A stretch of 64,000 nt of DNA from Anolis carolinensis (taxonomy: Eukaryota): contig NC_085844.1 in the NCBI RefSeq assembly GCF_035594765.1, forward strand, positions 87,373,923 through 87,437,922, given 5' to 3'. The notes beneath the pieces were generated by a model. It searched no databases. It was not told the DNA's origin and was given only the letters and a program-made list of their open reading frames with translations. The translations under genes and the position numbers were made by a program. Below are positions 9,401 through 60,121 of the stretch, one piece after another (positions within the stretch are counted from its first letter, which is position 1; each line of letters opens with the position of its first letter).

Positions 9401-9463
9401 CGTGAAGACGCCCGGGTCGCTCTCCATGAGGCACCACTCGCCGGCACTGCCTCCTCCCGCCAT
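353..9463 (-). CDS. UCHL5: Ubiquitin C-terminal hydrolase L5 (UCH37), coding exons 1-7, 3'-partial
   Basis: complement(join 9382-9463, 5819-5882, 4976-5081, 2299-2424, 2132-2193, 1915-2045, 353-416). All introns GT-AG and phase-consistent. Protein [28 protein letters not shown]...[12 protein letters not shown] (catalytic Cys)...AFHFVSY...LYELDGL (His, Asp). Confidence 0.98.
411..568. repeat. Direct duplication (~52 bp; 411-463 and 517-568) of the UCHL5 exon 7 acceptor region
   Basis: atactcctaaaat(a/g)aaagcacacaaatattacttgttaa(t/c)attt(a/c)tatgtac twice, 106 bp apart. Confidence 0.9.
819..1034 (-). mobile_element. Full-length tRNA-headed SINE with L2-type tail (Anolis SINE2-like)
   Basis: On - strand: A box TGGCGCAAACTGG, B box GAGTTCGAGGCC, stem-loop tail and (TAAA)n. 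Confidence 0.8.
1915..2045 (-). CDS. UCHL5: UCHL5 exon 6 (131 nt)
   Basis: [43 protein letters not shown]. Confidence 0.96.
2132..2193 (-). CDS. UCHL5: UCHL5 exon 5 (62 nt)
   Basis: [20 protein letters not shown]; tttag/gtaata. Confidence 0.96.
2299..2424 (-). CDS. UCHL5: UCHL5 exon 4 (126 nt)
   Basis: [42 protein letters not shown]. Confidence 0.96.
4976..5081 (-). CDS. UCHL5: UCHL5 exon 3 (106 nt)
   Basis: [35 protein letters not shown]; ag/gt boundaries. Confidence 0.96.
5819..5882 (-). CDS. UCHL5: UCHL5 exon 2 (64 nt)
   Basis: ttcag|(G)[20 protein letters not shown]|gtaagt. Confidence 0.96.
6001..6410. mobile_element. Old Tc1/mariner (Tc2/pogo-like) non-autonomous element
   Basis: TA-flanked, imperfect TIRs gtatactcatgtataagtc / gacttatacatgagtacat; related fragments ~2915-3010, ~18165-18370, ~30590-31015, ~63005-63110. 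Confidence 0.6.
6496..6631. mobile_element. Palindromic hAT MITE
   Basis: CAGTGGTT(T/C)TCAA TIRs, perfect 8-bp TSD ATCTAGAA. Confidence 0.85.
7160..7320 (-). mobile_element. CR1 LINE 3' fragment
   Basis: catagaatcacagag tail repeat; matches 3' end of CR1 at 12480-12760 in reverse. Confidence 0.7.
7995..8283. mobile_element. CAC...GTG MITE with 3-bp TSD (probably Chapaev3/CMC)
   Basis: TIR CA(C/T)TATGTAA / GTTACATAGTG, TSD TTA; same family at 34174-34468, 38558-39000, 62659-62946. Confidence 0.65.
8538..9129. mobile_element. PIF/Harbinger-type MITE cluster with nested Tc1/mariner MITE (8802-9075)
   Basis: GGCCCCTTCCACA / TGTGGAAGGGCC TIRs; inner CAG..GAGTCTCACTTATCC element inserted at duplicated TA. 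Confidence 0.8.
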
Positions 9464-9735
9464 GGCGGCTCTGAAGCGGCGGCAAAGGCGTCCGGCCTCG
9501 GCCTCCCTCAGGAGAGAAGAGGCGAGGCTCCGACAGCCCCGCTTCTCGCGCCGTGAATCCTCCGCCCGCGCGCACGCTGCTCTCTTCCCGACAGGCTCCG
9601 CGGAAGTCAGACAGGCGCTGAGAGATGAAGGGGACCGGAAGCCGGCCACAGAGAGGCAAGACTAGAGAGGCCCCGCTTCTTGTTTCCAATGCAACAAGGC
9701 GCGGAGGAGGCGGACATTTTGGAGGGCGCTCTGTC
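9290..9735 (-). promoter_or_regulatory. UCHL5 CpG-island promoter / 5' UTR
   Basis: GC/CpG-rich patch around the ATG; ETS-type CGGAAG cores (~9601, ~9636), CCAAT (~9686). Confidence 0.75.
9382..9463 (-). CDS. UCHL5: UCHL5 coding exon 1 (82 nt)
   Basis: gccgccATGG Kozak; [27 protein letters not shown]; donor G|GTGAG. Confidence 0.96.
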
Positions 9736-9770
9736 CTTCACCTCTCTATGGGAGCATGTACACTGAGGAA

Positions 9771-9851
9771 CAGGCATGGGCAAACTTCGGCCCTCCAGGT
9801 ATTCTGGCCTTCAACTCCCACAATTCCGTTAGGCAAGTTTGCCCATGCTTG
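9771..9851. mobile_element. 81-bp hAT MITE
   Basis: TIR CAGGCATGGGCAAACTT / AAGTTTGCCCATGCTTG; degenerate 8-bp TSD ctgaggaa/ctgtagaa; sibling at ~13217-13282. Confidence 0.7.
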
Positions 9852-10103
9852 CTGTAGAAGCAATGCAGTTTGGCACCGCCTTCATTGCCATGGTTCTGCG
9901 GTTTTAACAGTCTTTCGCCTTCTCTGCCTACCAATATTTTCCACCCCCAGGATTCCAGAGCATTGAGCCATGACAGTTAAAGCGGTGTCAAAACGGCGTC
10001 GATTCCACTGTGTCATCAGGCCTGTTGCCAGAAAAAAAATTGGGATAAGTTGAAACTCCCCCCCGCCCCCCAAGATGTCTTTTGAGGCCAGTGCCTGAAA
10101 TTA

Positions 10104-10915
10104 CAGTAGAGTTTCACTTATCCAGGGGCTCCTGGTGGCACAGTGTGTTAAAGCGCTGAGCTGCTGAACTTGCGGACCAAAAGGTCCCAGGTTCAAATCC
10201 CAGGAGCGGAATGAGCGCCTGCTGTTAGCCCCAGCTCCTGCCAACCTAGCAGTTCGAAAACATGCAAATGTGAGTAGATCAATAGGTACCGCTCCAGCGG
10301 GAAGGTAACGGCGCTCCATGCAGTCATGCCGGCCACATGACCTTGGAGGTGTCTACAGACAACGCTGGCTCTTTGGCTTAGAAATGGAGATGAGCACCAA
10401 CCCCCAGAGTCGGTCAAGACTGGACTTAACATCAGGGGAAACCTTTACTTTTACCTTCACTTATCCAATATTCACTTATCCAACGTTCTGGATTATCCAA
10501 CACAGTTTGCCCCCCGCCTCGATCCACAGCTGTTTCTCTGGGCAGCAAGAATTGAACTTTTTATGGATTTAATTTCTGACAATGTTGTCTGTAAGTTCAT
10601 TTTATGCACTTCTATCTTTTTTGTAGTTAATTTGTTGGTAACCAATATTTTTTGGTCAATGTTTTCAATATATTGCAATGTCTTGATGTTAAATTCATAA
10701 ATACAGTTATTCAGTACTGCATAATGTTACCTTGTATTGAACTGCTTTTTCTGTCAATTTGTTGTAAAACATGATGTTTTGGGTGCTTAATTTGAAAAAT
10801 CATAATGTAATTTGATGTTTAATACGCCTTTCCTTAATCCCTCCCTATTATCCAACATTTTTGCTTATCCAACGTTCTGCCGGCCCGTTTATGTTGGATA
10901 AGTGAGACTCTACTG
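10104..10915. mobile_element. Tc1/mariner (pogo/Tigger-like) MITE containing a Sauria SINE
   Basis: CAGTAGAGT(C)TCACTTATCCA TIRs, TA TSD. Confidence 0.85.
10125..10455 (+). mobile_element. Sauria SINE, full length
   Basis: tRNA head (tggcacagtgtg / ggttcaaatcc), (ACCTTT) tail, 12-bp TSD TTCACTTATCCA. Confidence 0.9.
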
Positions 10916-11489
10916 TACCATCATTGTGCAATGTTCTTCATGGGTAATAGGTCCTGAATCATTGCTCCTTCTTTAAGCCAGTTCTTGTCAGCCATAAAGG
11001 ACAATAGTTTTCACAACTGGCAGGACTTTGTTTTCTTCTGCTTTCTTTGTATTTGATCATGATAATGGGTTACATCAATATGTTTTCCACTGAATTAGCA
11101 AGAAGTTTTCAACCAGGTAGAAGTTGTTCTGATGGTACTCAGTTTTTTGGTGAGTACCATCAAGACTTCTACTGCATTTTTCAATCACACAAATGGTTTA
11201 GCAACCAATGCACCAAACTTTTGATGACCACCTTTGCCCCCAACTTCTCCTCCAAAGGAGTGCACCTTGTTACAACATTAAGATGTATTTTTGGCATTGC
11301 AGAGGGATTGGCTAAAAGATTTGTGGACTGAGAAAGGACCATTGTAAATACTACTGTTTTTGATCTCTTGGAATCAGTAAAGTTCCTGTATTTTTGTTCT
11401 GCAAACCTGAGTGGCATGTTATTGTTCTGCGGGTGACTCTGGATTGCAGGCATATGTAAGAGCTTCCATTTATCATAATTAATCCGTAA

Positions 11490-16382: not shown

Positions 16383-16962
16383 ATGGAAGAAGAAGTAAGT
16401 CAGATGGAGCCCTGTGACGAAAACCAGGTGCCAAATTCTGAAGGTGGATATGTGTGGCAGGTTACTGACATGAATCGATTGCGCCGTTTCTTGTGTTTTG
16501 GTTCTGAAGGAGGCACTTACTACATCAAGGAACAAAAATTGGGCTTTGAAAATGCTGAGGCTTTACAGAGACTTATTGAAGATGGCAAAGGGTGTGAAGT
16601 GGTGCAAGAAATAAAGACGTTCAGTCAAGAAGGCAGGGCAGCAAAACAGGAGCCTATCTTACTGGCACTTGCTATTTGCTCACAGTGCTCTGATACAAAA
16701 ACAAAACAAGCAGCTTACAAGGCTGTCTCTGATGTCTGTCGCATCCCAACCCATCTCTTCACTTTCATCCAGTTTAAAAAGGATCTGAAGGAGGGCATGA
16801 AGTGTGGCATGTGGGGTCGCGCCCTAAGAAAAGCTGTTGCTGATTGGTATAATGAAAAGAATGACATGGCTATTGCCTTAGCAGTGACAAAATACAAGAA
16901 AAGAAATGGCTGGTGTCATAAAGATCTTCTTCGATTGTCTCATCTAAAACCAGCAAACGAAG
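16383..16962 (+). CDS. RO60: RO60 first coding exon (acceptor at 16361, 580 coding nt)
   Basis: ORF 16383-16970 [10 protein letters not shown]...HLKPANE; donor G|GTAATT. Confidence 0.97.
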
Positions 16963-17260
16963 GTAATTAAATGTTTGGAAATGTTAACACAGCAATAGAT
17001 GTCTGCATTGAGCAATACTGTCTGTTAGGGTGGTTGAACAAGGGAAAGGAAGGCAGAGCTTGGAAAAAGTATTTGTTGGGATAGCTAGGCAACTTGGCTG
17101 GGGGATTCTGGGAATTGTAATTCAAAAAGAATTCTAAGCTAAATGAGGGAGGAAGCCTACATAAAACAGGAATTATTTTTGCCAGATAGTATTCTGACAT
17201 TGCACTAATGAATAGTCTGTTATGGTTTTTTTCTATCTATCTATCTATCTATCTATCTAG

Positions 17261-17306
<46 letters not shown>

Positions 17307-20300
17307 CAATATCTCAAATGCAAGTATTTAGGTAATGGTGTGACACAGATTTTTAGGGATGTACTGAGAGCGGTCTGTTTCCCCATTACAACTTATGTGT
17401 ACCAATGGGCATTAATAATAATATTAATATTAATAACAGTAGTTACTCTGGGACCCTAAGCTGGGTCTGAGAGAAGTCTGCTTCCCCATGACAGCTGATG
17501 TGTGCCAGTGGGCCTTAATAATATTAATATTAATAGCAATAGTTACTCTGGGACCCTAAGCTGGGTCTGAGAGAGGTCTGCTTCCCCATAACAGCTGATG
17601 TGTGCCAATGGGCGTTAATAATATTAATATTAATAACAATAGTACTCTGGGGAAGACCCAAATGCATTAAAAGTTGGTGGGCTAAAAGGGTTTGAAATGC
17701 TCTTCGTGTGTGGTGATTTTTACCCCTCTAGCCCAAAAACCGAGCGGGGGGTGAGGGGTGAGCCTCGGAAGCCCTCCCATTGCCGCCAATGGTCTGAAAA
17801 TTTTCACTTTTTTGTAAGCGAGATGAAAATTCTATTCATATAGGCGCTCCATTTTCGACAATGGGGACATATACAAAATTGATACAAAATGAATGAAACA
17901 AAACTAAACAAACAGTGATTCCATACAAATGCATTCCACTATTTTACTCATAGTGTTAACTGTAATAGAAGCTGGTTGTTTTTATTCTTGAAAGGATAAA
18001 ACTAAGCTGTATTTTTTCATATTGCCATCATTATGAAGCATTTTAATCTTATTTGTAGAAAAGCAAGTGTACATCCAGAATAAATTAAGTAATTAGTGGC
18101 AGCTTTGTGATAGTTTACTGTTTTCTTTCTACCTGTCTGCTCTTCTGTGTGTGTAGTCCTATGCAACATCGTGTACTCATGTATAAATCTAGAAAGTTTA
18201 GTCAAAAATCAAACCAAAAAACTGGGTCGACTTATCCATGGGCCAGTTTGGTACTGCATATTAACTCTTACTTTAAAAAAACGGAATCATTCCCTTCTTT
18301 GAGTAGAGTGATGAAAGGCAAAAGTTTGGTCCTTCCAAGGCAATTTTAAAAGAAGCACCAACCTGTTCTATAGTAGCAGTAGTGCCCAGGGTGTAAAATG
18401 TAAAGTATTTTGAATGTTTTTCTATCGAAGCATCCTAATAACTGTCCAGGTCTATGAATGTTTATCCAGGAGCAAGCCTTGTGCAAAAGTTGTTTGTTTT
18501 GCATGCAGATCACTACTCTATCTCTTATGCAATAGCTTTTCTGACTAAAAAGTTTAGCTAAGTTCCATTTAGGATATTAAGCATTTACATATTCTAGTTT
18601 AGAAGTAACTGGTATCTTTGATAGGAAGTAAAAATTGAATCCTTCAAGTAGTCACTGAAAACTAGGTTTAGAAAAATTTAGGAAGGGAATGGCTGCACAC
18701 AGTCACCAAGCATATTTCTTTGTTGTGTTGTCTATGCCCTCCTCTTTCCTAGAAAAAGAATTCTTTACAATAATGATGTTTTTTTGCTTTAGAGAACCTG
18801 AAGAATGTATAGCTTTCTCCTGCATAGGATCATCAAAATCCACCCAAAGCAAATCTGAATAACTTTTGATGACTTGGTGTTTTGATTTTTAAAATGTGTG
18901 ACTGAAAGGGAGTGGAGAGAGTTGTAGCTAGGTTAGGTAAAGTTGTAAAATTGGCTTCCTGAATCTCTGATGTTGGGGCTTTCTTAGTTTATGCTATAGA
19001 AATTTACATTTATTGCACCCACTGCTTTCTCATTGACATAATTTTAGTTTTTTTACTCTTGTTCTGCCTGCTTCATTGCTGCAAATAGTAAAAGTAAAAG
19101 CCAAGGAGAGTTACATAAAGCTTAGAAAATATCCTCATGTTTTCCTTTCAAAACAAATATAAGGGCTTTGGACATTCATTTAATTGCACAGGAAAACTAT
19201 TTGCTTTAGCAGTTCCCAGTAGTTATGAAGTCAAGGAAAATAATTCTAGAAACAAATGATTTTGAGGCTTTTCCATTGACATTATTTTAAAATACTGTAA
19301 GAATAGTGTGGTGCTTTGATGTTAATAATGTGAATGGAAAACAGTTTGGTGGATATGCTTCTGTCCACAAATTTCTTATTATGCTGCTGTTATGCAACAG
19401 TTCTTGAATAGAATTGTTTGTCTTTCAACAGGCCTTGCCATAGTCACTAAGTATGTCATGAAAGGGTGGAAGGAGGTCCAAGAAGCTTATAAAGATGACA
19501 AGTATTCTGCTGAAACTGAAAAACTGCTGAAGTATTTGGAGGCAGTGGAGAGGGTGAAACATACAAAGGATGAATTGGAAGTGATTCATTTGATAGAAGA
19601 ATTTAGTCTAGTTAGGGAACACCTCCTGACAAGTCATTTGAAATCTAAAGAGGTAAGTACATTATATAAATAATACTTTGAATATGTTTTGATGGATTTT
19701 TAACTGAATTTTTTAGTGCTGATGGTGTTTAATTGTTTTAATTTTCCATGTTTGTATATTTTAAATTCTTTCAAGCTGCTTTGAGTTCCCTTTGGGGAGT
19801 TAAAGCAGGGTATAAATAAATGTAAATAATAATAATAGTAACAATAATATCGTATTTTCTTAATTTGTACAATTGATCTTCATATTTAAACACTTGAGTT
19901 TCTTCTTTTTTTCAATATTTTTATTCTCACCCTATAAGGTATGGAAAGCATTGCTACAGGAGATGCCCTTAACAGCAATGCTGAGGAATCTAGGGAAGAT
20001 GACAGCAAATTCTGTTCTTGAACCAGGAAGCCCAGAAGTAACAATAGTTTGTGAAAGATTAAGAAATGAAAAACTTCTTAAAAAGGTAATGATTTCTGTT
20101 TTTTTAAAATAATAGATTCATTCTATTAATTCAGAAAGTTGGTCTTCTAGCAATGCTGAATTTGATGTCCAACTGATGACATTACTTTTCCTTTTTGCTT
20201 ACAAAATGTATTAATGAGAAGTGTGTTGGTTATGCTAAGGACATGGATTTGAAAGTCCCATCTCTGTGATCTTTGGAATTAGGTGAGAATGCAAATTAAT

Positions 20301-33133: not shown

Positions 33134-36100
33134 CTGTCATAGAAAAAAAATCAATGTTACCTCCTTGGCACAAAGTTCAGAGCACTACAGTGTTACCACA
33201 CATGTCATGTAAGATTTCTGAACAGATTCGGATATGTTGTTAAGAAGTGGTTGAAAGAATTGTGAACAGCCATCATTTGATAGTTTGGGATAAAAAGTCA
33301 AGATAACAGGAGCTTATCTAAATATCTAGTTTATCCAGTTTGAGCATCTAGTGAAGTAAATTGTTCTAAATTACAAATGAGACTGCCTTTCGCAAATCAA
33401 CTAAATGACAAATTGAACAAAATAGTTTACATGTTTCAGCACAATATTTCACTGTATTATAATTTAGGGTTTAAAAAAAGAAATCAAGGAATAATATGAT
33501 TGCAAAAGTTGTAGGATAAATGATAAAGTAAGGAAGGGTTCAAGATTATGACTCAAAAGCAATAATCTGCAAAATATTGTCATTGGGCATCTACCACCTG
33601 ACTTCCTTCAATGCAGGTTTTCTGTCAGAAAGGATAGTAAAAGTGTTTAGAAAGTGAAAAAAAAGTCTGCTATGCTAAGGAAATTAAATTCGTAACTCAC
33701 CCCAAGCCTATCTGAAAAACTAGCTGTTTTGACATAAAAACAATTTTGTTCTTTAAACATTTGAAGTAATCACATTGATACATGAGACATTATCATGTAA
33801 GAGATCCACCTGGTCCACTTTTTCTTCAAGTGATCAACTTTTCTCTGCAGAGATACCTAGTGACCTCCATGACCACAAATAGGGCATGAAGCAATAACTC
33901 CTTTCTTATAGTAATTCTCCAGCAACTTGTATACCACTATTAATAGCCATTGACATCTTTATGGAAGATAGGCCTATCTCAGCACAGCAGAATCATGTGT
34001 GCTCCAGATGGTTGGAATTCAGCTTAAAGAAGCTTCAGCCAATGGGCAACATGGACAAGTGGGATTTCTGGTCTTAAAAACATGAAGGGCCACAAAGGTT
34101 CCCCACTTCTTTTTCAAAGTCATCGAGCTTAGAAACTACTACTAGATACTTGGGTAGCAAATACACTACATTACACTATGTGACAACATTTGAAAAAAAA
34201 TCTGTTCCTGATTTGAAAGTATTATTGTGCAGTATTTACTTTGAAAGTAATTGTATACTCCAGGAACGTTGTTTTTCTGGCTGCTACAAACTATGTTGAA
34301 TTGGTTGAGACGCTCTGAAATATTTATTGAAAAACTATAGCAAAATGTGCTGCAAGATGTCCTGCAAAAACATGATTTTTACACTTTAATATACTTTTTC
34401 CATGTTTTATGATAGAACCAATTAGAAAATCATATTTATAACTCAGGAAAAAATAGTGTTACGTAGTGTTATGGATGGTGTCAATAAATACTTGTGTTTG
34501 GTGAATATACAGGCTGAGTCTTCCTTAAGAAGAAATATTTAAGATAAGAGGCTTTCAGAAATACACGCTGAATAAGGGATGAGGGAAAAGGGGGTAAAGA
34601 CTGGCTATCGGGATATTTTCAAGACTGGCTGTCAGGATATTTTCTGCCTTTTTGCTACAAAGCAAGGGGGAAATCCTCCTGCCTCCCATGAGTCTTTTCC
34701 ATTTTCTCTAGACTACATACAGACAGCAGCTAAGGGTCTGAGCTCACCCTTGTATGCTGGTTCGAAGACACTAGCCCCACACCAATGATTGGGTAGAAGG
34801 TGAGCATGGAAGCTTCTGGGACATCTTTTGATAGGGGCCTTGTGTGAGTCCTTTCCCCTTTTCACCATCAGATTTCTAACAGTGGTGGAATAAGAGCTCA
34901 TTGAAGAAAAATTCAGCAGGTGCTGGACAAGTGCCTACTCACTTTCCCCAAAGGTGGGAATGGGTGGCTGGTGAGCCAAAAGGTCTTAGGAATATTTTTG
35001 ATTTCTTGTATTGAAGTATATAGCACAGCAGACTACACAGCTGAACCTTTAAGGCCTAAGGAAGAGATGAAGAATATCTCTTTGGATGCTGAATCTTTTA
35101 AAGATTGCAATTCCCAAACACGTCTACACATCATGGCCGATGGTGAAGGATCAGAGAATGATACAGAACTATAGTTCAATATCTGGAGGGCCCCACATTT
35201 CTTACCCACACTTCCAGATAATACATTTGAAAAGGAAGTACTCACTGTCCTGCCACCAGTCATTTGATGAAGAACATCCTGAAACTGACTGCCATTTTCT
35301 TTTCTATCCAGTTCTATGGCTGTGTAATTTATATTTGCATCATGGAATAACTTCTTGGCCATGTTGCAGTAAGAACATGTTGTTTTTGAAAAGATCACTA
35401 CACAGTTGTCTGAGATAGTTTCCTGTGTATTAAAGCAAAAAAAAATGTGTGAGAAATTATATGTTAGTTTTTTCCACTAATGATAAGATGTTCACATTTT
35501 GATTTCCCTTTGCTTGAAGTATAAGAATTTATAGTACAGTGCAATCCTATGCATCTTTACCCAGAAATAAATCCACTCAATTCAAATGGATTTATCTCTA
35601 GGTAAATGTATATAAGATTTACATAGAGATGGATCATCATTGTAGAAAACAACTCATTTTCTACCCAAGTCTCTCTTTTTTAAGCACCAATATACTTAGA
35701 TACTAAAGACAGTTAAGTCCAGGAGAATATTCCATTATATAGGTTCCAAAAAAAAAATTAACATTCATGCTTCTTATCTTCAATCTTGCCTTTCTTTTTT
35801 ACAAAAGCCCCATCATATTCAAGGTACCTGTGTATACAATTGCAGCTTAAATGGGGCAGGGATAGAAAAAATGGAAACCTTTGCTAAAGGAGATAGAAAT
35901 ATATATTCTTTCTTCACACTTGCATATTATGGGAGAAAGGTCTGTCCTTTCCTAGGTATGATTATTATTGAACTCAGATCAGAGTTTCAGTTGAGTCAAT
36001 ATGACTAGCTGACTAGTGTGTTTTTCAGCAACAACTGCACAATTTTATTAATCTGTATTTAAATAAAGAAGAATAAAACTACCTCTTCAAAGTAGCTGTC

Positions 36101-39100
36101 CATCCTGAATGAAGACTGGATAGCTATATAGTATTGAGACGTAACTATAGCTTCCATTAGGAGCCACTTTCTATTCTATGTATTCATTCATAATATTGTT
36201 ATCCCACTCTGTATGTTAAGATGTCAGTCCAAATAGAATAAACTTAAACAGACTAAAAAGCATATTTGGACAGAATTAGACCCCAGAGGCCTCAATAAGC
36301 AGCCATGTTTCACCATGGTGCTAGAATGACAACCAGGGTTCCACAGCTGAGGAGGCCTTCAATCCTTACACATGCTTATATTGTTAACAGATACCTATGT
36401 AAAACAATTCAAAGAATGCAAGACAATGAGTCCTACCAAGTTCACAGGAAAAACAGCAACATAATTTTTCTAACCATAAACATACAGATCTTTATCTCTA
36501 TCGATGAGTCCATCATGAAAACCTTCAGATTTATGTTAGTTTCAATAGAAACGTCACATGGAATGATAATCCAGTTGCTACTACCAATTGGTATAGACCC
36601 ATGGGATTTACATTAATATTATCCAGCAATTGCTTCAGTAGGTTTTACTGGGACTGACAGTTGTATTCTGGTCAACATAATAAGCATCTTCACTCACCTT
36701 AATGTGGTTAGCAGTAGCAGTATTTGATAAGTCTGTAGTAATAGATGGACTGTTTCCCATTCTAAAATAAAGCCAATAATAGTCAATTACAATCATGCCT
36801 TGCAGAATTTAGTCAGTCTTATAGACTATATTATGACCACAATCCTATGCTTATTTACCAGTAATACCTACAGAACTCAACAGGACCCAGTAGACATATA
36901 TAGAATTGGTATAATGTTCAACAAGAAAAGAATGAGGAAAAAAGCATATACTAGCAAATGTATTTTTTCATTCATTTTTAAGCAACCTCATAATGCATGC
37001 CTCCAACTGTCATTGGGATTCCATGTTTCCACCATATATTGTCATATTTAGGGCTGATAAGAGCTGTTGGTGAATTAAATGTAGTAATCAGAAGTTTCCC
37101 ATCAATAATATTTCCCATCTCTAATATAGCCCATAACAAAGGAATCCTATGAGTATTCAAAGATCCAGTAAGTTCACTGGGGCTTACTTTTGTTCAGCTG
37201 TTACAGGATTTCAACCTACCGACATGATAGATATATATAATCCAAATGACAGCATTTTAGATTTTATATCTTTATGCACCTGTATTTGCAGCAGTAATTT
37301 ATTCAAGCCTCTCTTTATATAGACACCCCACAAAAGACATTAACGTTAACTCTTAAAATGTCAAAATCATACGAAAAATAAACTGAACATGAAAAGTTTG
37401 AAGCTATATTTGGAAAACAAGGAGTTGGGTTAGTTGAAACTTGAGGCTATCTCCACTTATTCAACAACATGATTTCCAGAGAGTTTGGAAGTAATTCTTG
37501 CTCTCCAAATTTAGCTATATGGATATGGGCGACTTCATTTCTCTGGAATATGAACTGAACTCAGGCAACATATCAAAATTTGAAAGTTAACACAATGTAG
37601 GCTTACCTGCTATTATATCTTTTTCCTGGCAGGGTAGTTAAACCTTTCAAACCAACAAACTCACTCTTGCATTCCCTGCTCAAATGTATCGGAGAGTCTT
37701 CACTGTGGTCTGCCTGAATATTTCCCCTACAGCAGTTTTGAGGGAAGATAGTGGAAAGTTCCTTTTTGTGAACACAACTTTCCATGTGATCTTGGTAAAG
37801 CTTGAACCAGTAACTCTTAGGTATCATCTTTCCCCTCACAATACATGGAATGTTTTAATCAGAACTCATGGAAAATTCCCAAATGCATGTATTTGTATTT
37901 ACTTCCTTTACTTTTTTTTCCAGATCAGAACAAAGTAATTTCTCTCAAAGTAGATAAAATTTATGTTGCCATGTGTTCATTATACCAGGAATTTATTTTA
38001 GTTATCACACAGGATTCTGATCTGTGATTTTAATATTAATATTTAACATCTATTCTTATTCAAGATCACATCATACCATACGTATCACCTGTCGACTTAT
38101 GGTGACTCCATGACTTTTATAGAGCTTTCTTACACAAGGAGTGCTCAGAGATATTTTTGCCAGTTCCTTCTTCTGAAATATGGCATAGAGCCCTTGGGAT
38201 TCATTATATGTTACCCATCCAAGTATTAACCAGGGATAAACCTGCTTAGCCTTTAAGATCACATGGGGCCTGATCAAATATACAGTAGACTTTCAGTTAA
38301 CCAGACCTCTCAAACAACCAGTAAAAATTAAAATTAATGTATAATACAGTTAAACTATGTTATATTAAGTTTGTCTTTATTCGCTTTTAATTACATATTA
38401 ATATTCAAGTCAATAAAGAGTTTATAGTATGGTATAGTATGGGGTATCATATTAGGCCTATTTTTAATAACTCTGAAACATTCAGAAATTACATTTATCT
38501 GGCATCTACCAATCTCTAGGGATGCCAGTTATCTGAGAGTTTACTGTACTTGGACAACACTATGTAACGTTCTTTGAAAAAATGATGTTTCTGGTTTGAA
38601 AGTGTTGTTTCCTGTTTAATTGTGTGGTACTTACAGTAGAATCTCACTTATCCAACACTCACTTATCCAATGTTCTGGATTATCCAACGCATTTTTGTAG
38701 TCAGTGTTTTCAAAACATCGTGATATTTTGGTGCTAAATTCGTAAATACAGTAACTACTGCATAGCATTACTGCATATTAAACTACTTTTTTGTCAAATT
38801 TGTTGTCTAACGTGATGTTTCGGTGCTTAATTTGTAAAATCATAACCTAATTTGATGTTTAATAGGCTTTTCCTTAATCCCTCCTTATTATCCAACATAT
38901 TCACTTATCCAACGTTCTGCTGGCCCGTTTATGTTGGCTAAGTGAGACTCTACTGTACTTTGCAAATAGTTGCTATACTCTATAAATGTGCTGCAGGATA
39001 TAGATAACAACAACAACAACAACACTTCATTTGTACCCCACCCTATCTCAACGAGGGTACTCAGGGTGGTTTCCAACAAAAGTAACAAAATGGCAAACAT

Positions 39101-42054
39101 TCAATGCTGAAAACAGACAATAATAAATCAAAACAGTGGGTAAAACAATCTCAAAATAAACTTATAAAACTAAACAAAAATAATACATAATTGAACTTAA
39201 ATAAACACAATATAACCCATCGTACACAATTTCCACAGACTCAAGTAGGTGTCCAATATCTAGGCAAGGATATATATAAAGGTGTAGTAGTCTTTCTCCT
39301 CTCCATATGCTAAGGTACATAAATGAGTTTTAAAAGCTTTTTAAAGGAGAGATGGGTGGGGAGCCGTTTTTATTTCTTTAGCGAGGAAGTTCCAGAGGAG
39401 AAGGGCAACCACAGAGAAGACCCCCCTCTCTCGTTCCCAATGTTCCCAACCGTGCTTGAGAGGGGGGAGGGCGGGATCGAGAGGAGGGTCTCCCCTGTCA
39501 ACCACAGTGCTCAAGCTGGTTTGTATACGGAGATACGTTTTTTTCAAATAGATAAAGATATTAATATATTATTATCAACTGAAATCTAAGAAACTTAAAG
39601 TGCTTCACTTTTACTGAACCACCATTTGGTAGCAAATGCAACAACATTCTAAACCCCCTTCCACACAGCTGCACAAAATCCACATTGAACTGGATTATAT
39701 GGCAATGTAGACTCAGATAATCCAGTTCAAAGCAGATATTGTGGATTATCTGCCTTGATATTCTGGGTTATATGGCTGTGTGGAAGGGCCCTTTTTTCTT
39801 CTCTTGGCCCAAATGCAACTGAAGTATCTCTATCTATACTGCAATAATAAGAACAGAACTTGTTTTTTCTTTCTCCCTTCCCATTTTTTTTCTTGCGTGT
39901 TTGTCAAGTTTAGATGGCAACTCTGGTCTAGGGACTATCTTACAATCTATATCTGTAAACAATCCAGCAGCCTTTCTCTTTCTTTGGAGCAGCATATAAA
40001 GCAGTGGCTCCCAACCTTTGGGCCTCCAAGTGTTTTGGACTTCAACTCTCAGAAATGCCAGCCAGTTTACCAGCCGTTAGGAACTGTGGGAGCTGAAGTC
40101 CAAAACACCAGTAATATAAAGGAACAAAAGGACCTAAATCATCCAAATGCATAAGATGTGATTTGATCTTGGAAACTAAGCAGGATCAGCCATGGCTGGT
40201 ACCTGAATATCAGATTCTGTAGGGGTAGGAGGAAGGTTAAAACCTTTTTATTCAAGCAGGTTTTTAAAGAACAAAGCTTTTAAGTTCATCAGAGGCTGCT
40301 GTGATTTTATATGCTTTTCATAATGTTCAATACTGTTTTAATATTTGCATATTTGCATATTTTAAGTTGTATTGCAATGCTTTAGTTGTGAGCCACTTTG
40401 AGTCTCCGTATGGAGAGAAAAAGAGGAAGATAATTACAACAACAACAACAACAATAGGCTATATTTCAGAGGAAGAAACTGGCAAAGACATCTCTGTGGC
40501 CCCATCTATACTGCCATATAATCCACATTATCTGCCCTGAACTGGATTACATGAGGCCTCTTCTACATTGTCCTTATCTGATCCCAAATTATCTTCTCAT
40601 CCCAGATTGTATGGCAATGGAGACTTATATGTAAATCTATATATATAAAAGAGTGATGGCATCAGGGCAGTGGACAAAACAACAAAACTACAGGCCCCCC
40701 AACCTCGAAATTTGACAACACAACCCATCATCCACGCCTCTAGGTTGATACAACAAAAAGAAAAGAAAAATAAAGTCCTAATTAGAGGGAGAGCAATAAT
40801 TGTTTTTATCCAATTGCTGCCAGTTTAGAGGGCTAATCTCTGCCCACTTCGTTGCCTAGCAACCAAGGGACAGCCAGGTTTCAGTTAGGGGACAGGCAAA
40901 TTTAGGCCTCACTTAGGCTTCTTCCACAGATTATCTAATTTGCACTGGATTATATGGCAGTGTAGACTCAAGGTCCTTCCACACAGCTATATAACCCATT
41001 TATAATCTTATATTATCTGCTTTGCACTGGATTATCTTGACTCCACACTGCCATATAATCCACTTCAGTGTGCATTTTATACAACTGTGAAGAAGGGGCC
41101 TCATATAATCCAGTTCTAAGCAGATAATATAAGATGATCAATATACAGTAGACTCTCACTTATCCAACATAAACAGGCCGGCAGGATAAGTAAATATATT
41201 GGATAATAAGAAGGGATTCAGGAAAAGCTGATTAAACATCAAATTAGGTAATCGTTATACAAATTAAGCACCAAAACATCATATTATACAATAAATTTGA
41301 CAGAAAAGGTAGTTCCATGCGCAGTAATGCTATGTAGTAATTACAGTAGAGTCTCACTTATCCAACACTCGCTTATCTAACATTCTGGATTATCCAACGC
41401 ATTTTTGTAGTCAATGCTTTCAATATATCGTGATATTTTGGTGCTAAATTCATAAATACAGTAATTACTACATAGCATTACTGCGTATTGAACTACTTTT
41501 TCTGCCAAATTTGTTGTCTAACATGATGTTTTGGTGTTTCATTTGTAAAATCATAACCTAATTTGATATTTAATAGGCTTTTCCTTAACGCCTCCTTATT
41601 ATCCAACATATTCGGTAACCCAACATTTTGCCAGCCCACTTATGTTGGATAAGTAAGACTCTACTATACTGTATTTACAAATTTACCAGTAAAATATCAC
41701 AATGAATTTGAAACACTGACTACAAAAACATTGATTATGAAAAGGCAGACTGTGTTGGATAATCCAGAACATTGTATAAGCGAATGTTGGATAAGTGAGA
41801 TTCTACTTTGATATGAAATAATTTCTAGGATAGAATAATGCAGAACAATATAATCTCTAAAACCAGGACAGTAATAAAGAAATAAAGAAATAATGAAAGT
41901 AAATAAAGCAAGGAAATTGGAAATTCCACAAAGGAAACAATCAGGGCCAGCTAACACCTCCCAAGAAAGGATTCTTCCAGAAAGGAAGCTGAGAAGGCAG
42001 TGAAGCACTATGTATTACCAAAGTCATTATTATTACTATCATTACTATCCTTAC

Positions 42055-42091
<37 letters not shown>

Positions 42092-44424
42092 GTGTTGCGA
42101 TCAACCGTGAAAATGAATACAATCTGACTCCAAGTATTCAAAAACACTAAAATCAGAATATATAAAAATTAATGTGGTATAATAAAACAGAACAATACAA
42201 TCTCTAAAATCAGAACACTAAATAAAGAACAACACTCTGAAAATAGGGGAATTCCACACAGAAAACAATCAGGGCCAGCTAACACCTCCCAACAAAGGAT
42301 TCCCATCATCAAAGTCTGGCCAATCCTCTGTTTTCTCAGGGCCACAGACAGTAGAAGCATATAAAATATCGCAAACAACACCACTCTGAAAACAAGGTAA
42401 TTCCAGACAGGAAACAATCAGGGCCAGCTAACACCTCCCAACAAAAAAATCACTCAGGGAGGAAACAGCTAGGCTTTAAATCTGCAAGGCCATTACATCC
42501 TAATCATTTTTCCTAATTGCAGCATTCATACTTGCCTCCAACAGACAAAAAAAAAAACCCAAAACAATCAGAAATTTTGTATATTCACAATCTTTAGGAA
42601 ATAATATCCCCTGATGGCACAGCATGTTAAAGCGCTGAGCTGCTGAACTTCTGGACCGAAAGGCCGCAGGTTTGAATTGGGGGAACTGACAGAGCCCCCA
42701 CTGTTAGCCCCAGCTTCTGCCAACCCAGAAGTTCAAAAACATGTAAATGTGAGTGCATGAATAGGTACTGCTCCGGTGGGAAGGTAACGCCGCTCCATGC
42801 AGTCATCCCACATGACCTTGGAGGAGTCTACAGACAACGACGGCTCTTCGGCTTAGAAATGGAGATGAGCACCAACCCCCAGAATCAGACATGACTGGAC
42901 TTAACGTCAGGGGAAAACATTTACCCTTGACATTAACTACCACCAATTCCTCAATACTTTATTTCCCATACCACCATTCTTCGCCACAGCAACGCGTGGC
43001 CGGGCACAGCTAGTCTATATATATAAAAGAGTGATGGCATCAGGGCAGTGGACAAAACAACAAAACTACAGGCCCCCCAACCTCGAAATTTGACAACACA
43101 ACCCATCATCCACGCCTCTAGGTTGATACAACAAAAAGAAAAGAAAAATAAAGTCCTAATTAGAGGGAGAGCAATAATTGTTTTTATCCAATTGCTGCCA
43201 GTTTAGAGGGCTAATCTCTGCCCACTTCGTTGCCTAGCAACCAAGGGACAGCCAGGGTGCAGTTAGGGGACAGGCAAATTTAGGCCTCACTTAGTCTTCT
43301 TCCACAGATTATCTAATTTGCACTGGATTATATGGCAATGTAGACTCAAGGTCCTTCCACACAGCTATATAACCCATTTATAATCTTATATTATCTGCTT
43401 TGCACTGGATTATCTTGACTCCACACTGCCATATAATCCACTTCAGTGTGCATTTTATACAACTGTGAAGAAGGGGCCTCATGTAATCCAGTTCTAAGCA
43501 GATAATATAAGATGATCAATATACAGTAGACTCTCACTTATCCAACATAAACAGGCCGGCAGGATAAGTAAATATATTGGATAATAAGAAGGGATTCAGG
43601 AAAAGCTGATTAAACATCAAATTAGATAATCGTTATACAAATTAAGCACCAAAACATCATATTATACAACAAATTTGACAGAAAAGGTAGTTCCATGCGC
43701 AGTAATGCTATGTAGTAATTACAGTAGAGTCTCACTTATCCAACACTCGCTTATCCAACGTTCTGGATTATCCAACGCATTTTTGTAGTCAATGTTTTCA
43801 ATATATCGTGATATTTTGGTGCTAAATTCATAAATACAGTAATTACTACATAGCATTACTGCGTATTGAACTACTTTTTCTGCCAAATTTGTTGTCTAAC
43901 ATGATGTTTTGGTGTTTCATTTGTAAAATCATAACCTAATTTGATATTTAATAGGCTTTTCCTTAACGCCTCCTTATTATCCAACATATTCGGTTATCCA
44001 ACATTTTGCCAGCCCACTTATGTTGGATAAGTGAGACTCTACTGTACTGTATTTACAAATTTACCAGTAAAATATCACAATGAATTTGAAACACTGACTA
44101 CAAAAACATTGATTATGAAAAGGCAGACTGTGTTGGATAATCCAGAACATTGTATAAGCGAATGTTGGATAAGTGAGATTCTACTTTGATATGAAATAAT
44201 TTCTAGGATAGAATAATGCAGAACAATATAATCTCTAAAACCAGGACAGTAATAAAGAAATAAAGAAAGTAAATAAAGCAAGGAAATTGGAAATTCCACA
44301 AAGGAAACAATCAGGGCCAGCTAACACCTCCCAAGAAAGGATTCTTCCAGAAAGGAAGCTGAGAAGGCAGTGAAGCACTATGTATTACCAAAGTCATTAT
44401 TATTACTATCATTACTATCCTTAC

Positions 44425-44467
<43 letters not shown>

Positions 44468-47047
44468 GTGTTGCGGTCAACCGTGAAAATGAATACAATC
44501 TGGCTCCAAGTATTCAAAAACACTAAAATCAGAATATATAAAAATTAATGTGGTATAATAAAACAGAACAATACAATCTCTAAAATCAGAACACTAAATA
44601 AAGAACAACACTCTGAAAATAGGGGAATTCCACACAGAAAACAATCAGGGCCAGCTAACACCTCCCAACAAAGGATTCCCATCATCAAAGTCTGGCCAAT
44701 CCTCCGTTTTCTCAGGGCCACAGACAGTAGAAGCATATAAAATATCGCAAACAACACCACTCTGAAAACAAGGTAATTCCAGACAGGAAACAATCAGGGC
44801 CAGCTAACACCTCCCAACAAAAAAATCACTCAGGGAGGAAACAGATAGGCTTTAAATCTGCAAGGCCATTACATCCTAATCATTTTTCCTAATTGCAGCA
44901 TTCATACTTGCCTCCAACAGACAAAAAAAAAAACAATCAGAAATATTGTATATTCACAACCTTTAGGAAATAATGTCCCCTGATGGCACAGCATGTTAAA
45001 GCGCTGAGCTGCTGAACTTCTGGACCGAAAGGCCGCAGGTTTGAATTGGGGGAACTGACAGAGCCCCCACTGTTAGCCCCAGCTTCTGCCAACCCAGAAG
45101 TTCAAAAACATGTAAATGTGAGTGCATCAATAGGTACTGCTCCGGTGGGAAGGTAACGCCGCTCCATGCAGTCATCCCACATGACCTTGGAGGAGTCTAC
45201 AGACAACGATGGCTCTTCGGCTTAGAAATGGAGATGAGCACCAACCCCCAGAATCAGACACGACTGGACTTAATGTCAGGGGAAAACGTTTACCCTTTAC
45301 CTTAAGTACCACCAATTCCTCAATACTTTATTTCCCATACCACCATTCTTCGCCACAGCAACGCGTGGCCGGGCACAGCTAGTGTTATTGTAAATCTAAA
45401 ACCTTTTTATTTAGATGGGTGTTTAAAGATGAAGGTTCTTAAGATCAATTCAGTGGGTGCTGTGGTTTTTAATACTGTTTATATTTAATCCTGTTTTAAT
45501 GTACATATATTTGTATATTTTAAATGGTTATGCTGATGTTTTTATGTTAAACTGCTTTGAGTCCCCTTTAGAGGAGATAAAGCGGGGTATAAATAAATAT
45601 AATAATAATAATAATTCAGTTCAAAGTAGTTAACCTGGGATTTTTTTTTCTGTGTCAGGAGTGATTTGAGAAACTGCAAGTCGCTTCTGGTGTGAGAGAA
45701 TTGGCTGTCTGCAAGAACGTTGCCCAGGGGTCTCCCGGATGTTTTACCATCCTGTGGTAGGCTTCTCTCATGTCCCCGCATGGGAAACTGGAGCTGACAG
45801 ATGGGAACTCATCCCGCTCCCTGGATTCAAACCATTAGTAAGTAAGTAAAACTTTATTTATATACCGTCCTCTCTCCCCAAAGAGACTCAGGGCAGTTTA
45901 CAAGCATAAAAACAGCAACATACATTACAAGCAACACAATACACACATCATTAGACAAAACTGTGGACCTTTCAGTCAGCAGTCCTGCCAGCACAAGGAT
46001 TTAACTCACTGCATCACCTGGGATTAAATCCTTCGATATGGAGCCTCCGGTGGCCAAGGGGATAAAAGCCTTGTGACTTCAGGTTGGGTTGCTGACCTAA
46101 AGGCTGCCAGGTTCGAATCCTATCCGGGGAGAGTGTGGATGAGCTCCAGCTCCATGCTGGGACATGAGAGAAGCCTCCCACAAGGATGGTAATACATCAA
46201 AACATCTGGGCGTCCCCTGGGCAACGTCCTTGCAGACAGCCAATTCTCTCGCTCCAGAAACAACTCAGGTTGCTCCTGACATGAAAAAAAAAATCCTTCA
46301 ATATAAGAACAGTGTAGAAGGGGCCTGTTGGATCTACACTGCCCTATATTTCAGGATCTGATCCTAGATTATCTGCTTTGAACTGGATTGTATGAATCTA
46401 CACTGCCAGATAATATGGAATAAGAAAATAATCTGGGATTAGATCCTGGGATATAGGGCAATGCAGATCCAACCTTGGGGCCCTTCCACACAGCCATATA
46501 ACCCAGGGCCCTTCCATACAGGCCCTATATCCCAGGATCTGATCTCATGTTTTCTGTTTATCTCAGATAAACAGATACACTGCCAAATAACCCAGCAGAA
46601 ACTGTGCCTTGATACTCTGGGTTATATGGCTGTGTCGAAGGGCCCCTACATTGGCTGGGGCCGAGCAGCAAGAGCGTACTCTTCATACATGCTCAGAGGA
46701 ACTCTCTTCCTTCCAGAACGGGGCTGAAGTTCCTACACCTTCAAATTGACTTCACTGCCAAATCCTACCTTCTTTTATTTTTGAAAAAACAACAGCTTGC
46801 ATTACAGGACGAGTTCGGAACACAGCGGTAAGTGTTCTCCTGCGATGTAAGCGAGAAGAGCCTTCCGAGAGACCCAAGGTGAGCGCGGCCACAATGCGCA
46901 TGCGCACCCAAAGTGGCCTGTCAACAGTGGTAACACAGAGCGAAGGCAAAAGGCCTTCTTGTGAAGGCAAAGGCCCAACGGGACCGCCACCCACCTGAGC
47001 CAAGAGCAGCGACGCAGCTCCCGCCTCAGCAGCGCTCTCAGCGCCAT
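32987..47047 (-). CDS. GLRX2: Glutaredoxin-2 with N-terminal mitochondrial presequence, 146 aa
   Basis: complement(join 46995-47047, 36698-36761, 35246-35422, 32987-33133) = 441 nt. CSYC active site, TVP, GG motif, structural Cys in SDNCVV and VHQC. Exon 1 assignment is less certain than exons 2-4. Confidence 0.93.
34174..34468. mobile_element. CAC...GTG MITE (probably Chapaev3)
   Basis: CACTATGTGAC / GTTACGTAGTG, TSD TTA. Confidence 0.65.
35246..35422 (-). CDS. GLRX2: GLRX2 exon 3 (177 nt)
   Basis: ETISDNCVVIFSKTTCSYCNMAKKLF...QMTGGRT|gtgagt. Confidence 0.97.
36698..36761 (-). CDS. GLRX2: GLRX2 exon 2 (64 nt)
   Basis: ttttag|A ATG: MGNSPSITTDLSNTATANHIK|gtgagt. Confidence 0.92.
38080..38275 (-). 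mobile_element. 5S rRNA-derived SINE (SINE3-type) with RTE-like tail, old
   Basis: - strand tgatcttaaaggctaagcagg...cctggttaatacttggatggg matches the 5S internal control region; second copy ~40160-40500 (+) split by an L2 tail. Confidence 0.65.
38283..38546. mobile_element. Tc1/mariner MITE (second family)
   Basis: TA-flanked cagtagactttcagttaacc / ccagttatctgagagtttactg. Confidence 0.6.
38634..38955. mobile_element. Tc1/mariner MITE nested in a CAC...GTG MITE
   Basis: CAGTAGA.TCTCACTTA TIRs, TA TSD. Confidence 0.85.
39005..39540 (-). mobile_element. L2 LINE 3' fragment
   Basis: (AAC)n end, ccctatctc..gggtactcagggtgg stem-loop tail, similar to 11688-12147. Confidence 0.6.
40636..43013 (+). 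mobile_element. Composite non-autonomous Helitron, copy 1 (2378 bp)
   Basis: Preceded by A; starts TCTATATATATAAAA; GCCAC(A)GC-aac-GCGTGGC hairpin 42983-43000 then CTAG terminus; no TSD, no TIR, no RepHel ORF. Confidence 0.9.
43014..45382 (+). mobile_element. Composite non-autonomous Helitron, copy 2 (2369 bp)
   Basis: Begins TC directly after CTAG of copy 1; same hairpin and CTAG; followed by T (45383). Confidence 0.9.
45643..46015 (-). mobile_element. tRNA-headed A-tailed SINE with internal L2-tail insertion (~45835-45960)
   Basis: TSD ACCTGGGATT. Confidence 0.8.
46040..46290 (+). mobile_element. tRNA-headed A-tailed SINE
   Basis: B box ggttcgaatcc; TSD AAATCCTTC(G/A)ATAT. Confidence 0.8.
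46895..46906. promoter_or_regulatory. Perfect NRF1 palindrome TGCGCATGCGCA
   Basis: Exact 12-bp consensus, ~90 bp into GLRX2 intron 1. Confidence 0.7.
46995..47047 (-). CDS. GLRX2: GLRX2 exon 1, Arg/Leu-rich mitochondrial targeting peptide
   Basis: MALRALLRRELRRCSWL + AG|GTGGGT donor; phase 2 joins exon 2 (A ATG) in frame; lies in CpG island. Confidence 0.8.

Positions 47048-47364: not shown

Positions 47365-60121
<12,757 letters not shown>

What the first reader, a model, noticed from the sequence alone, without database searches (positions are those of the whole stretch)
40636..45382. Exact head-to-tail Helitron dimer: signature of rolling-circle concatemer formation
Seen: two ~2.37-kb copies whose boundaries coincide to the base with Helitron termini: A|TCTATATATATAAAA...hairpin-CTAG|TCTATATATATAAAA...hairpin-CTAG|T, with no spacer or flanking DNA duplicated. 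Established: Helitrons have 5'-TC, a 3' hairpin plus CTRR, insert in AT without TSD, and form circular intermediates with CTAG-TC junctions. Inference: the junction is G|T on its left side, so copy 2 is not an ordinary AT insertion; it fits read-through of the terminator on a circular donor, i.e. the seed of a Helitron tandem array in a reptile. The copies differ by scattered substitutions, a 9-bp indel and (TTA)n length (roughly 1-2% by eye), so the event is not brand new.
Basis: partly seen in the sequence, partly recalled or inferred. Interest (0 to 1): 0.8.

Follow-up and report, generated by a model that had tools for sequence, protein, structure and literature searches.

The report
Head-to-tail Helitron transposon dimer
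Two copies of a 2.4-kb rolling-circle transposon (Helitron) sit end to end with no base between them, most likely because the transposon's own copying machinery made them so; such pairs are already known from bats, flies, plants, fungi and frogs, so this is an ordinary example that I did not find reported for a lizard.

Summary
Window 40636-43013 (2378 bp) and 43014-45382 (2369 bp) are direct copies. Each starts TCTATATATATAAAAGAG and ends in a short palindrome, 9 bases, then CTAG. They are joined CTAG|TC, lie between a host A and a host T, and no flank is duplicated. They differ by 29 substitutions and three indels of 8, 6 and 7 bp (98.8% identity).

The unit is a non-coding Helitron that is mostly cargo: a SINE, a palindromic MITE, another common repeat and three internal modules. 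It resembles the published anole family Helitron-2N3_AC, but I could not compare sequences.

A chance second insertion at exactly this base is expected only 0.002-0.15 times per genome. An ordinary duplication would not stop at both element ends. So the Helitron machinery made the pair.

1.2% divergence is not clearly below the published family mean of about 2%. No other family copies or long reads could be fetched, so the assembly is untested.

Tandem Helitrons and this same pair of explanations are already in the literature. An unchecked scan note reports another such junction elsewhere in this genome. Interest is low to moderate.

The parts
40635..40635 (+). Host A immediately 5' of the dimer (left half of the AT target)
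   Evidence: Sequence
40636..43013 (+). Helitron copy 1, 2378 bp, 5'-TC ... CTAG-3', non-coding
   Evidence: longest ORF overlapping it is 103 aa
43014..45382 (+). Helitron copy 2, 2369 bp, same ends, 98.8% identical to copy 1
43010..43015 (+). Exact head-to-tail junction CTAG|TC
   Evidence: Sequence
42983..43000 (+). 3' subterminal palindrome of copy 1 (GCCACAGCAACGCGTGGC), 13 nt before the element end
   Evidence: DNA fold: 7 pairs with one bulge, -5.5 kcal/mol, z -0.84
45352..45369 (+). Same palindrome in copy 2 (the last 76 bp of the two copies are identical)
45383..45383 (+). Host T immediately 3' of the dimer (right half of the AT target)
   Evidence: Sequence
40927..41142 (.). Cargo in copy 1: fragment of a common dispersed repeat (element positions 292-507); same in copy 2
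   Evidence: blastn of copy 1 against the window, (many short hits, e.g. 39655-39790, 48234-48283)
41143..41807 (.). Cargo in copy 1: palindromic MITE-like element (element positions 508-1172); same in copy 2
   Evidence: other copies at 38623-38959, 50440-50738, 10648-10918 and 8800-9017 (80-90% identity); self inverted match
41831..42445 (+). Cargo in copy 1: three internal copies of a 73-140-bp module, with an (ATT)n run at 42026-42091; same in copy 2
42610..42928 (+). Cargo in copy 1: SINE copy (element positions 1975-2293); same in copy 2
   Evidence: other copies at 10131-10448, 53726-54038 (-) and 49473-49616 (84-86% identity)

Best explanation
This is a genuine head-to-tail dimer of a ~2.37-kb non-autonomous, cargo-laden Helitron, made by the Helitron rolling-circle machinery and not by ordinary duplication. 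The most likely route is as follows. A circular copy with joined ends (CTAG-TC) served as donor. The transposase nicked it at the 5' end and unwound it. It ran past the joined ends once, which is helped by a weak 3' palindrome. It then delivered a two-unit single strand into one host AT site. On this route the two units were identical at birth and have since diverged by 1.2%, partly through CpG decay. Shown here: the anatomy, the exact junction and the improbability of chance. Inferred: the circular donor, the read-through and the single integration event.
For: Both units have 5'-TC, 3'-CTAG, a subterminal palindrome followed by 9 nt and then CTAG, and no terminal inverted repeats. The outer flanks are A and T, with no target duplication. 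The repeat ends at the element ends on both sides. A uniform-target second insertion landing exactly on a resident 5' boundary in the same orientation is expected 0.002-0.15 times per genome. An unchecked scan note lists a second exact CTAG|TC junction elsewhere in this genome, after about 30 Mb scanned. Helraiser makes circles with exactly this junction. Those circles are active donors, and a missing or weak palindrome gives end bypass (PMC4778049). Both copies carry the same minority letters where 68-99% of laid contig depth in four runs reads another letter: element position 36 (T against C) and position 2343 (T against A). At 5 of the 29 differing sites shown, one copy has the family majority letter and the other a rare one. 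Several differences are CpG to TpG or CpA, in both copies. Both patterns are what decay after the split would give.
Against: Sisterhood is not shown. 1.2% is not clearly below the published family mean of 1.98%. The shared minority letters may only mark a subfamily. Polarised changes are uneven: 11 in copy 1 against 3-4 in copy 2, and 8 against 0 in the MITE part. That unevenness fits a younger or different-lineage copy 1 or a gene conversion at least as well. No read or contig was shown to bridge the junction at this locus, because the output was swamped by repeats. The palindrome is statistically unremarkable.
Confidence: 0.5

Rival explanations
1. Two separate transposition events. Copy 2 was resident, and copy 1 later integrated between the host A and the first T of copy 2. 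This could happen because the AT-rich 5' end is a favoured kind of target, or because the transposase cleaves the resident element's own 5' site and uses that nick as the target.
For: A|T(C) is a valid target. Helraiser prefers AT-rich DNA, most strongly on the 3' side of the integrated element (PMC4778049), and here that side would be TCTATATATATAAAAG. Divergence of 1.2% lies within the family range. Copy 1 carries more derived changes than copy 2 (11 against 3-4), as expected if it came from a later master copy. The same alternative is given in the literature for a triple tandem in Metarhizium (PMC5148889).
Against: With uniform targeting the expectation is 0.002-0.15 events per genome. Four more AT sites lie within the next 10 bases, so even a local preference predicts the exact boundary only about one time in five. 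Both copies share minority letters. Targeting of a resident 5' end has not been demonstrated.
Confidence: 0.25
2. A double-stranded Helitron circle recombined by a single homologous crossover with a resident chromosomal copy. This also yields an exact tandem pair with the circle's CTAG-TC junction in the middle.
For: Circles with this junction are made by Helitrons (PMC4778049). The product structure is identical to what is seen. It would allow the copies to differ at birth.
Against: It predicts a single switch point in which copy carries the derived state, and the polarised sites do not show a clean switch: c2, then 8 x c1, then c2, c1, c1, c2?, c1, c2 along the element. There is no direct evidence for such integration of Helitron circles.
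Confidence: 0.1
3. Assembly artefact: one copy in the real genome, or two haplotypes or paralogues stitched in tandem.
For: The family has many copies. No long read or contig spanning the dimer was available. No run held more than 74% of the sampled words.
Against: No flank is duplicated and the join is exact to the base, so reads carrying CTAG|TC must exist. The copies differ at 29 sites and 3 indels in a CpG-decay-like pattern. The window has no N. A 151-bp contig of an independent run matches left flank plus the first 20 nt of copy 1 without mismatch (X6).
Confidence: 0.07
4. Generic tandem duplication (unequal exchange or replication slippage) unrelated to Helitron activity.
For: One base of microhomology (T) lies at the duplication boundary.
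Against: Both breakpoints would have to fall on the element's first and last base by chance. The 70%-identical flanking repeats at 40237-40455 and 45395-45615 would have duplicated flank DNA as well, which is not seen.
Confidence: 0.03

Closest known systems
Tandem Helitron insertions and arrays reported in Myotis lucifugus, Drosophila, rice, maize, Arabidopsis centromeres, Metarhizium and Xenopus laevis (as cited in PMC5876387, PMC2997563, PMC5148889, PMC11934779, PMC12001565)
   Same: Same-orientation Helitron units joined end to end and attributed to rolling-circle replication or circular intermediates. Xenopus arrays have 2-7 units with monomers up to about 2 kb. The Metarhizium case is discussed with the same two alternatives.
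   Different: This case is in a lizard-type genome, where I found no report. There are only two units, each full length and mostly cargo. The plant centromeric cases are described as truncated Helitrons.
Helraiser/Helibat1 circular intermediates (Grabundzija et al. 2016, PMC4778049; 2018, PMC5876387)
   Same: A precise junction of CTAG-3' to 5'-TC; 5'-TC/CTAG-3' ends; a palindrome near the 3' end (19 bp, 11 nt from the end, against 18 nt, 13 nt from the end here); an A|T target.
   Different: Those junctions are in extrachromosomal circles in cultured cells, whereas this one is chromosomal. The resemblance of the 5' end to the Helibat left end is from my memory only; the strings were not found in the paper library.
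Anolis carolinensis Helitron-2N3_AC (Novick et al., PMC3014272)
   Same: About 2 kb, more than 1000 copies, non-autonomous, the only anole Helitron family described as composite with SINE and Poseidon fragments, and young (about 2% pairwise divergence).
   Different: The unit here is 2.37 kb. The paper does not mention tandem copies.

Membership tests
Helitron (canonical, Helitron1 type) | 5'-TC terminus | tested here: met
   Both copies start TCTATATA...
Helitron (canonical, Helitron1 type) | 3'-CTRR terminus | tested here: met
   Both copies end CTAG
Helitron (canonical, Helitron1 type) | Short palindrome about 10-12 nt upstream of the 3' end | tested here: inconclusive
   An 18-nt palindrome (7 pairs, one bulge) lies 13 nt from the end, so the position fits. 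Its energy of -5.5 kcal/mol is no better than shuffles (z -0.84).
Helitron (canonical, Helitron1 type) | Insertion between host A and T without target-site duplication | tested here: met
   The outer flanks are ...TGTAAA| and |TGTTAT..., with no adjacent duplication. No empty site was recovered; one X15 contig breaks exactly at 40635 but was not resolved.
Helitron (canonical, Helitron1 type) | No terminal inverted repeats | tested here: met
   The AT-rich 5' end and GC-rich 3' end are not complementary on direct reading. The blastn self-hits show inverted matches only inside the cargo.
Helitron (canonical, Helitron1 type) | Many genomic copies sharing these termini, with different flanks | tested here: inconclusive
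   Contigs of four runs pile onto the terminal parts. A joint linking element position 145 to position 2348 is seen in all four runs, which suggests short relatives with the same ends. No individual copy could be fetched.
Helitron (canonical, Helitron1 type) | An autonomous partner encoding Rep/helicase with the same ends | not testable with these tools
   None in the window. PMC3014272 reports Helitron-1_AC and Helitron-2_AC in the anole.
Rolling-circle-derived Helitron multimer | Same orientation and base-exact junction of 3' end to 5' end | tested here: met
   CTAG|TC at 43013/43014
Rolling-circle-derived Helitron multimer | Units are each other's closest relatives and of equal age | tested here: inconclusive
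   98.8% identity against a family mean of about 98%. Shared minority letters at element positions 36 and 2343. Derived changes 11 against 3-4, p 0.06-0.12.
Rolling-circle-derived Helitron multimer | The dimer is present on single molecules at this locus | not tested
   Only short Logan contigs were available and the single read-laying run was swamped by repeats.
Helitron-2N3_AC of Anolis carolinensis | Sequence identity to the family consensus | not testable with these tools
Only the description matches: about 2 kb, composite, SINE plus Poseidon fragments.

The most novel reading that the evidence does not exclude
The dimer is an insertion polymorphism in the living population: a contig in run X15 follows the left flank without mismatch and departs exactly at base 40635. 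If so, its two halves, 1.2% apart, were already different when it arrived. Helitron dimers in this lizard would then be mobilised as units, or built repeatedly at resident 5' cleavage sites, by a family that is still active. With roughly a hundred such junctions genome-wide, that would be natural vertebrate material for testing end bypass against end targeting.
Probability: 0.1. Interest if true: 0.55.

Novelty: new member of a known kind. Interest (0 to 1): 0.25.

Why it matters
Exact head-to-tail Helitron junctions in chromosomes are used as natural support for the circular, rolling-circle route of Helitron transposition shown in cell culture. This case adds a clean example with full-length units and unambiguous ends from a genome with young, abundant Helitrons. 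If such junctions prove frequent there, counting them against insertions at neighbouring AT sites, and testing whether the units are sisters, could decide between terminator bypass and targeting of resident 5' ends. On its own the locus teaches nothing new about the mechanism.

Tried and rejected
1. Fetching other family copies for a tree. Exact look-ups of four ORFs from the element, one of them spanning the junction, found nothing. Exact scans of 5' and 3' terminal strings in metagenome and viral contigs found nothing. No supplements were held for the two anole Helitron papers. I did not run the costly protein word search: contigs of this repeat are about 100 bp long and the four exact look-ups were blank, so the yield looked poor.

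2. Read support. All runs of the species were Logan contigs. Junction-bridging pieces, loose ends at the termini and any 40635-to-45383 joint were among the thousands of rows not shown. A narrower stretch around the three boundaries would have been the better choice.

3. Checking my recollection that the 5' end resembles the Helibat/Helraiser left end. The strings are not in the paper library, so this remains memory only.

4. tRNA and Rfam scans of 38-48 kb found nothing.

5. Readings rejected: a target-site duplication based on the 10-bp TGTAAATCTA recurrence (its register does not fit the repeat boundaries), and unequal exchange between the 70%-identical flanking repeats (it would duplicate flank DNA).

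Full report
**Observation**

- Copy 1 is 40636-43013 (2378 bp) and copy 2 is 43014-45382 (2369 bp).
- Both start TCTATATATATAAAAGAG and both end GCGTGGCCGGGCACAGCTAG.
- The junction is CTAG|TC with nothing between the copies. The base before the pair is A and the base after it is T.
- Similarity stops at the element ends; only the single T that follows each copy is shared.
- Each terminal string occurs exactly twice in the window, even with 3 mismatches allowed.
- The copies differ by 29 substitutions (19 transitions, 10 transversions) and three indels of 8, 6 and 7 bp. Identity is 98.8% (K = 1.24%).
- Several differences are CpG to TpG or CpA changes, and they occur in both copies. CpG is at about 37% of expectation. 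This looks like decay in the genome, not sequencing error.

**What the unit is**

The unit has no ORF above 103 aa, no tRNA and no Rfam match. A blastn of copy 1 against the window shows that most of it is cargo shared with other window loci:
- a common dispersed repeat at element positions 292-507;
- a palindromic MITE-like element at 508-1172, with other copies at 38623-38959, 50440-50738, 10648-10918 and 8800-9017;
- three copies of a 73-140-bp module plus an (ATT)n run at 1196-1810;
- a SINE at 1975-2293, with other copies at 10131-10448, 53726-54038 and 49473-49616.

Only about 290 bp at the 5' end and about 85 bp at the 3' end are private to the element.

The ends meet the Helitron definition given for Helibat/Helraiser (PMC4778049): 5'-TC, CTAG-3', no inverted termini, host A and T, and no target duplication. 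An 18-nt palindrome (42983-43000) lies 13 nt from the end; Helraiser has 19 bp at 11 nt. The palindrome is weak (-5.5 kcal/mol, z -0.84).

Novick et al. (PMC3014272) describe six non-autonomous anole Helitron families. One of them, Helitron-2N3_AC, is about 2 kb with more than 1000 copies and 1.98 +/- 0.29% pairwise divergence. It is the only family described as composite, with SINE and Poseidon fragments.

**Surroundings**

The pair lies in repeat-rich, non-coding DNA.
- A TROVE-domain exon lies at 16383-16970 (+) and a glutaredoxin exon at 35033-35398 (-).
- Two 70%-identical copies of a ~220-bp repeat lie at 40237-40455 and 45395-45615, with a third at 19710-19837. They are too far out to explain the duplication.

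**Why the Helitron machinery made the pair**

A generic tandem duplication would need both breakpoints to fall on the first and last base of the element. A chance second insertion needs an AT site that is exactly the resident 5' boundary, in the same orientation. I used the window's AT frequency (9%), a genome of 1.8 Gb (a size assumed from my own knowledge, not measured here) and 1000-10000 insertions. That gives 0.002-0.15 such events per genome. An earlier, unchecked note of this scan lists another exact CTAG|TC Helitron junction elsewhere in this genome, after about 30 Mb read (s1-536054). If that note is right, such junctions are far commoner than chance.

**Which route**

Three routes give this structure.

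Those circles are active donors, and loss of the palindrome causes end bypass. The weak palindrome here fits that.
2. *A second element integrated at the resident 5' boundary.* Helraiser prefers AT-rich DNA on the 3' side of the integrated element, and TCTATATATATAAAAG is that kind of sequence. But four more AT sites lie within 10 bases, so a simple preference predicts the exact boundary only about one time in five. Use of the transposase's own cleavage site on the resident copy would predict it always. That step is my inference and has not been demonstrated.
3. *A circle recombining homologously with a resident copy.*

The discriminating tests are whether the units are sisters, whether they are of equal age, and whether the differences form a mosaic. 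What I could get is mixed.
- The 1.2% divergence is not clearly below the family mean of about 2%.
- In contigs of four runs from four studies, both copies carry letters that are in the minority. At element position 36 they have T where 68-98% of depth reads C. At position 2343 they have T where 95-99.9% reads A. They therefore share at least a sub-lineage.
- At five differing sites shown, one copy has the majority letter. The rare letter is in copy 1 at 41378 and 42932, and in copy 2 at 43259, 44975 and 45306.
- Using the other MITE and SINE copies in the window as outgroups, all 8 polarisable differences in the MITE part are derived in copy 1, as are 2 in the SINE part.
- In total this is 11 derived changes in copy 1 against 3-4 in copy 2 (binomial p 0.06-0.12; 8 against 0 gives p 0.008, but that subset was chosen after the fact and some sites are adjacent).
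- Equal age is thus neither shown nor rejected. The order of polarities along the element shows no single switch, which weighs against route 3.

My estimates are about 0.5 for route 1, 0.25 for route 2 and 0.1 for route 3.

If the units were identical at birth, 1.24% corresponds to roughly 3-9 million years at 0.7-2 x 10^-9 substitutions per site per year. Those rates are from my own knowledge, not from a tool.

**Assembly and population evidence**

Only short Logan contigs were available, and my single read-laying run was flooded by repeats. No bridging of the junction at this locus was shown, and an artefact cannot be excluded; I put it at about 0.07. Several points speak against an artefact: the exact join without duplicated flank, the 29 differences, and the absence of N in the window.

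Two contigs are informative.
- In run X6, a 151-bp contig matches 40505-40655 without mismatch. That is left flank plus the first 20 nt of copy 1, which falls below the tool's 31-letter rule for bridging.
- In run X15, a 198-bp contig matches 40506-40635 without mismatch and then runs on for 68 letters unlike the Helitron. The break is exactly at the insertion site. This could be the empty-site allele, which would make the dimer polymorphic. I could not resolve it.

**Comparison with what is known**

Head-to-tail Helitron junctions and tandem arrays are in the literature and are already read as footprints of rolling-circle replication.
[quoted passage not shown] - Tandem insertions in Myotis, Drosophila, rice and maize, and a triple tandem in Metarhizium discussed with the same two alternatives (PMC5148889).
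- Concatemers in Arabidopsis (Xiong et al. 2016, as cited in PMC11934779).
- 43 Helitron-derived arrays of 2-7 units in Xenopus laevis (PMC12001565).

The anole transposon survey does not mention tandem copies, and none of the listed papers holding Helitron, Anolis and tandem looked relevant from title or abstract. I therefore file this as a new member of a known kind. Interest is 0.25.

Noticed in passing
window 40506-40635 (run X15, record 17): A 198-bp contig follows the left flank without mismatch and departs exactly at 40635, the insertion site, for 68 further letters unlike the Helitron. It may be an empty-site allele, which would mean the insertion is polymorphic.
   Followed up: no
window 41248-41666 against 43626-44044: In the MITE cargo, all 8 polarisable differences between the copies are derived in copy 1, while copy 2 keeps the MITE-family state (8 against 0). 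This may reflect a gene conversion or a different source lineage for copy 1.
   Followed up: partly
window 42892-42937 against 45261-45306: Six of the 29 differences fall within 46 bp, at the SINE to 3'-terminus transition. About 0.6 would be expected, and three of the six are at CpG.
   Followed up: no
window 40630-40639 and 45388-45397: The 10-mer TGTAAATCTA spans the left boundary (host TGTAAA plus Helitron TCTA) and recurs 5 bp past the right end. Its register does not fit a target duplication. The inferred empty site would carry an imperfect 12-bp local repeat (TGTAAATGTTAT / TGTAAATCTAAA).
   Followed up: partly
window 40237-40455, 45395-45615 and 19710-19837: Three copies of a ~220-bp repeat ending in (AAT)n or (CAA)n. 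Two of them bracket the dimer at 70% identity in the same orientation.
   Followed up: partly
window 40780 joined to 42983 (table 5): Contigs in all four runs join element position 145 to position 2348 (intervening letters not known). This suggests short Helitron relatives that keep only these terminal parts.
   Followed up: no
window 16383-16970 (+) and 35033-35398 (-): An ORF with a TROVE domain (Pfam E 1.5e-24) and an ORF with a glutaredoxin domain (E 2.5e-11). They are probably exons of neighbouring RO60-like and GLRX2-like genes, so the dimer lies in non-coding DNA beside them.
   Followed up: partly
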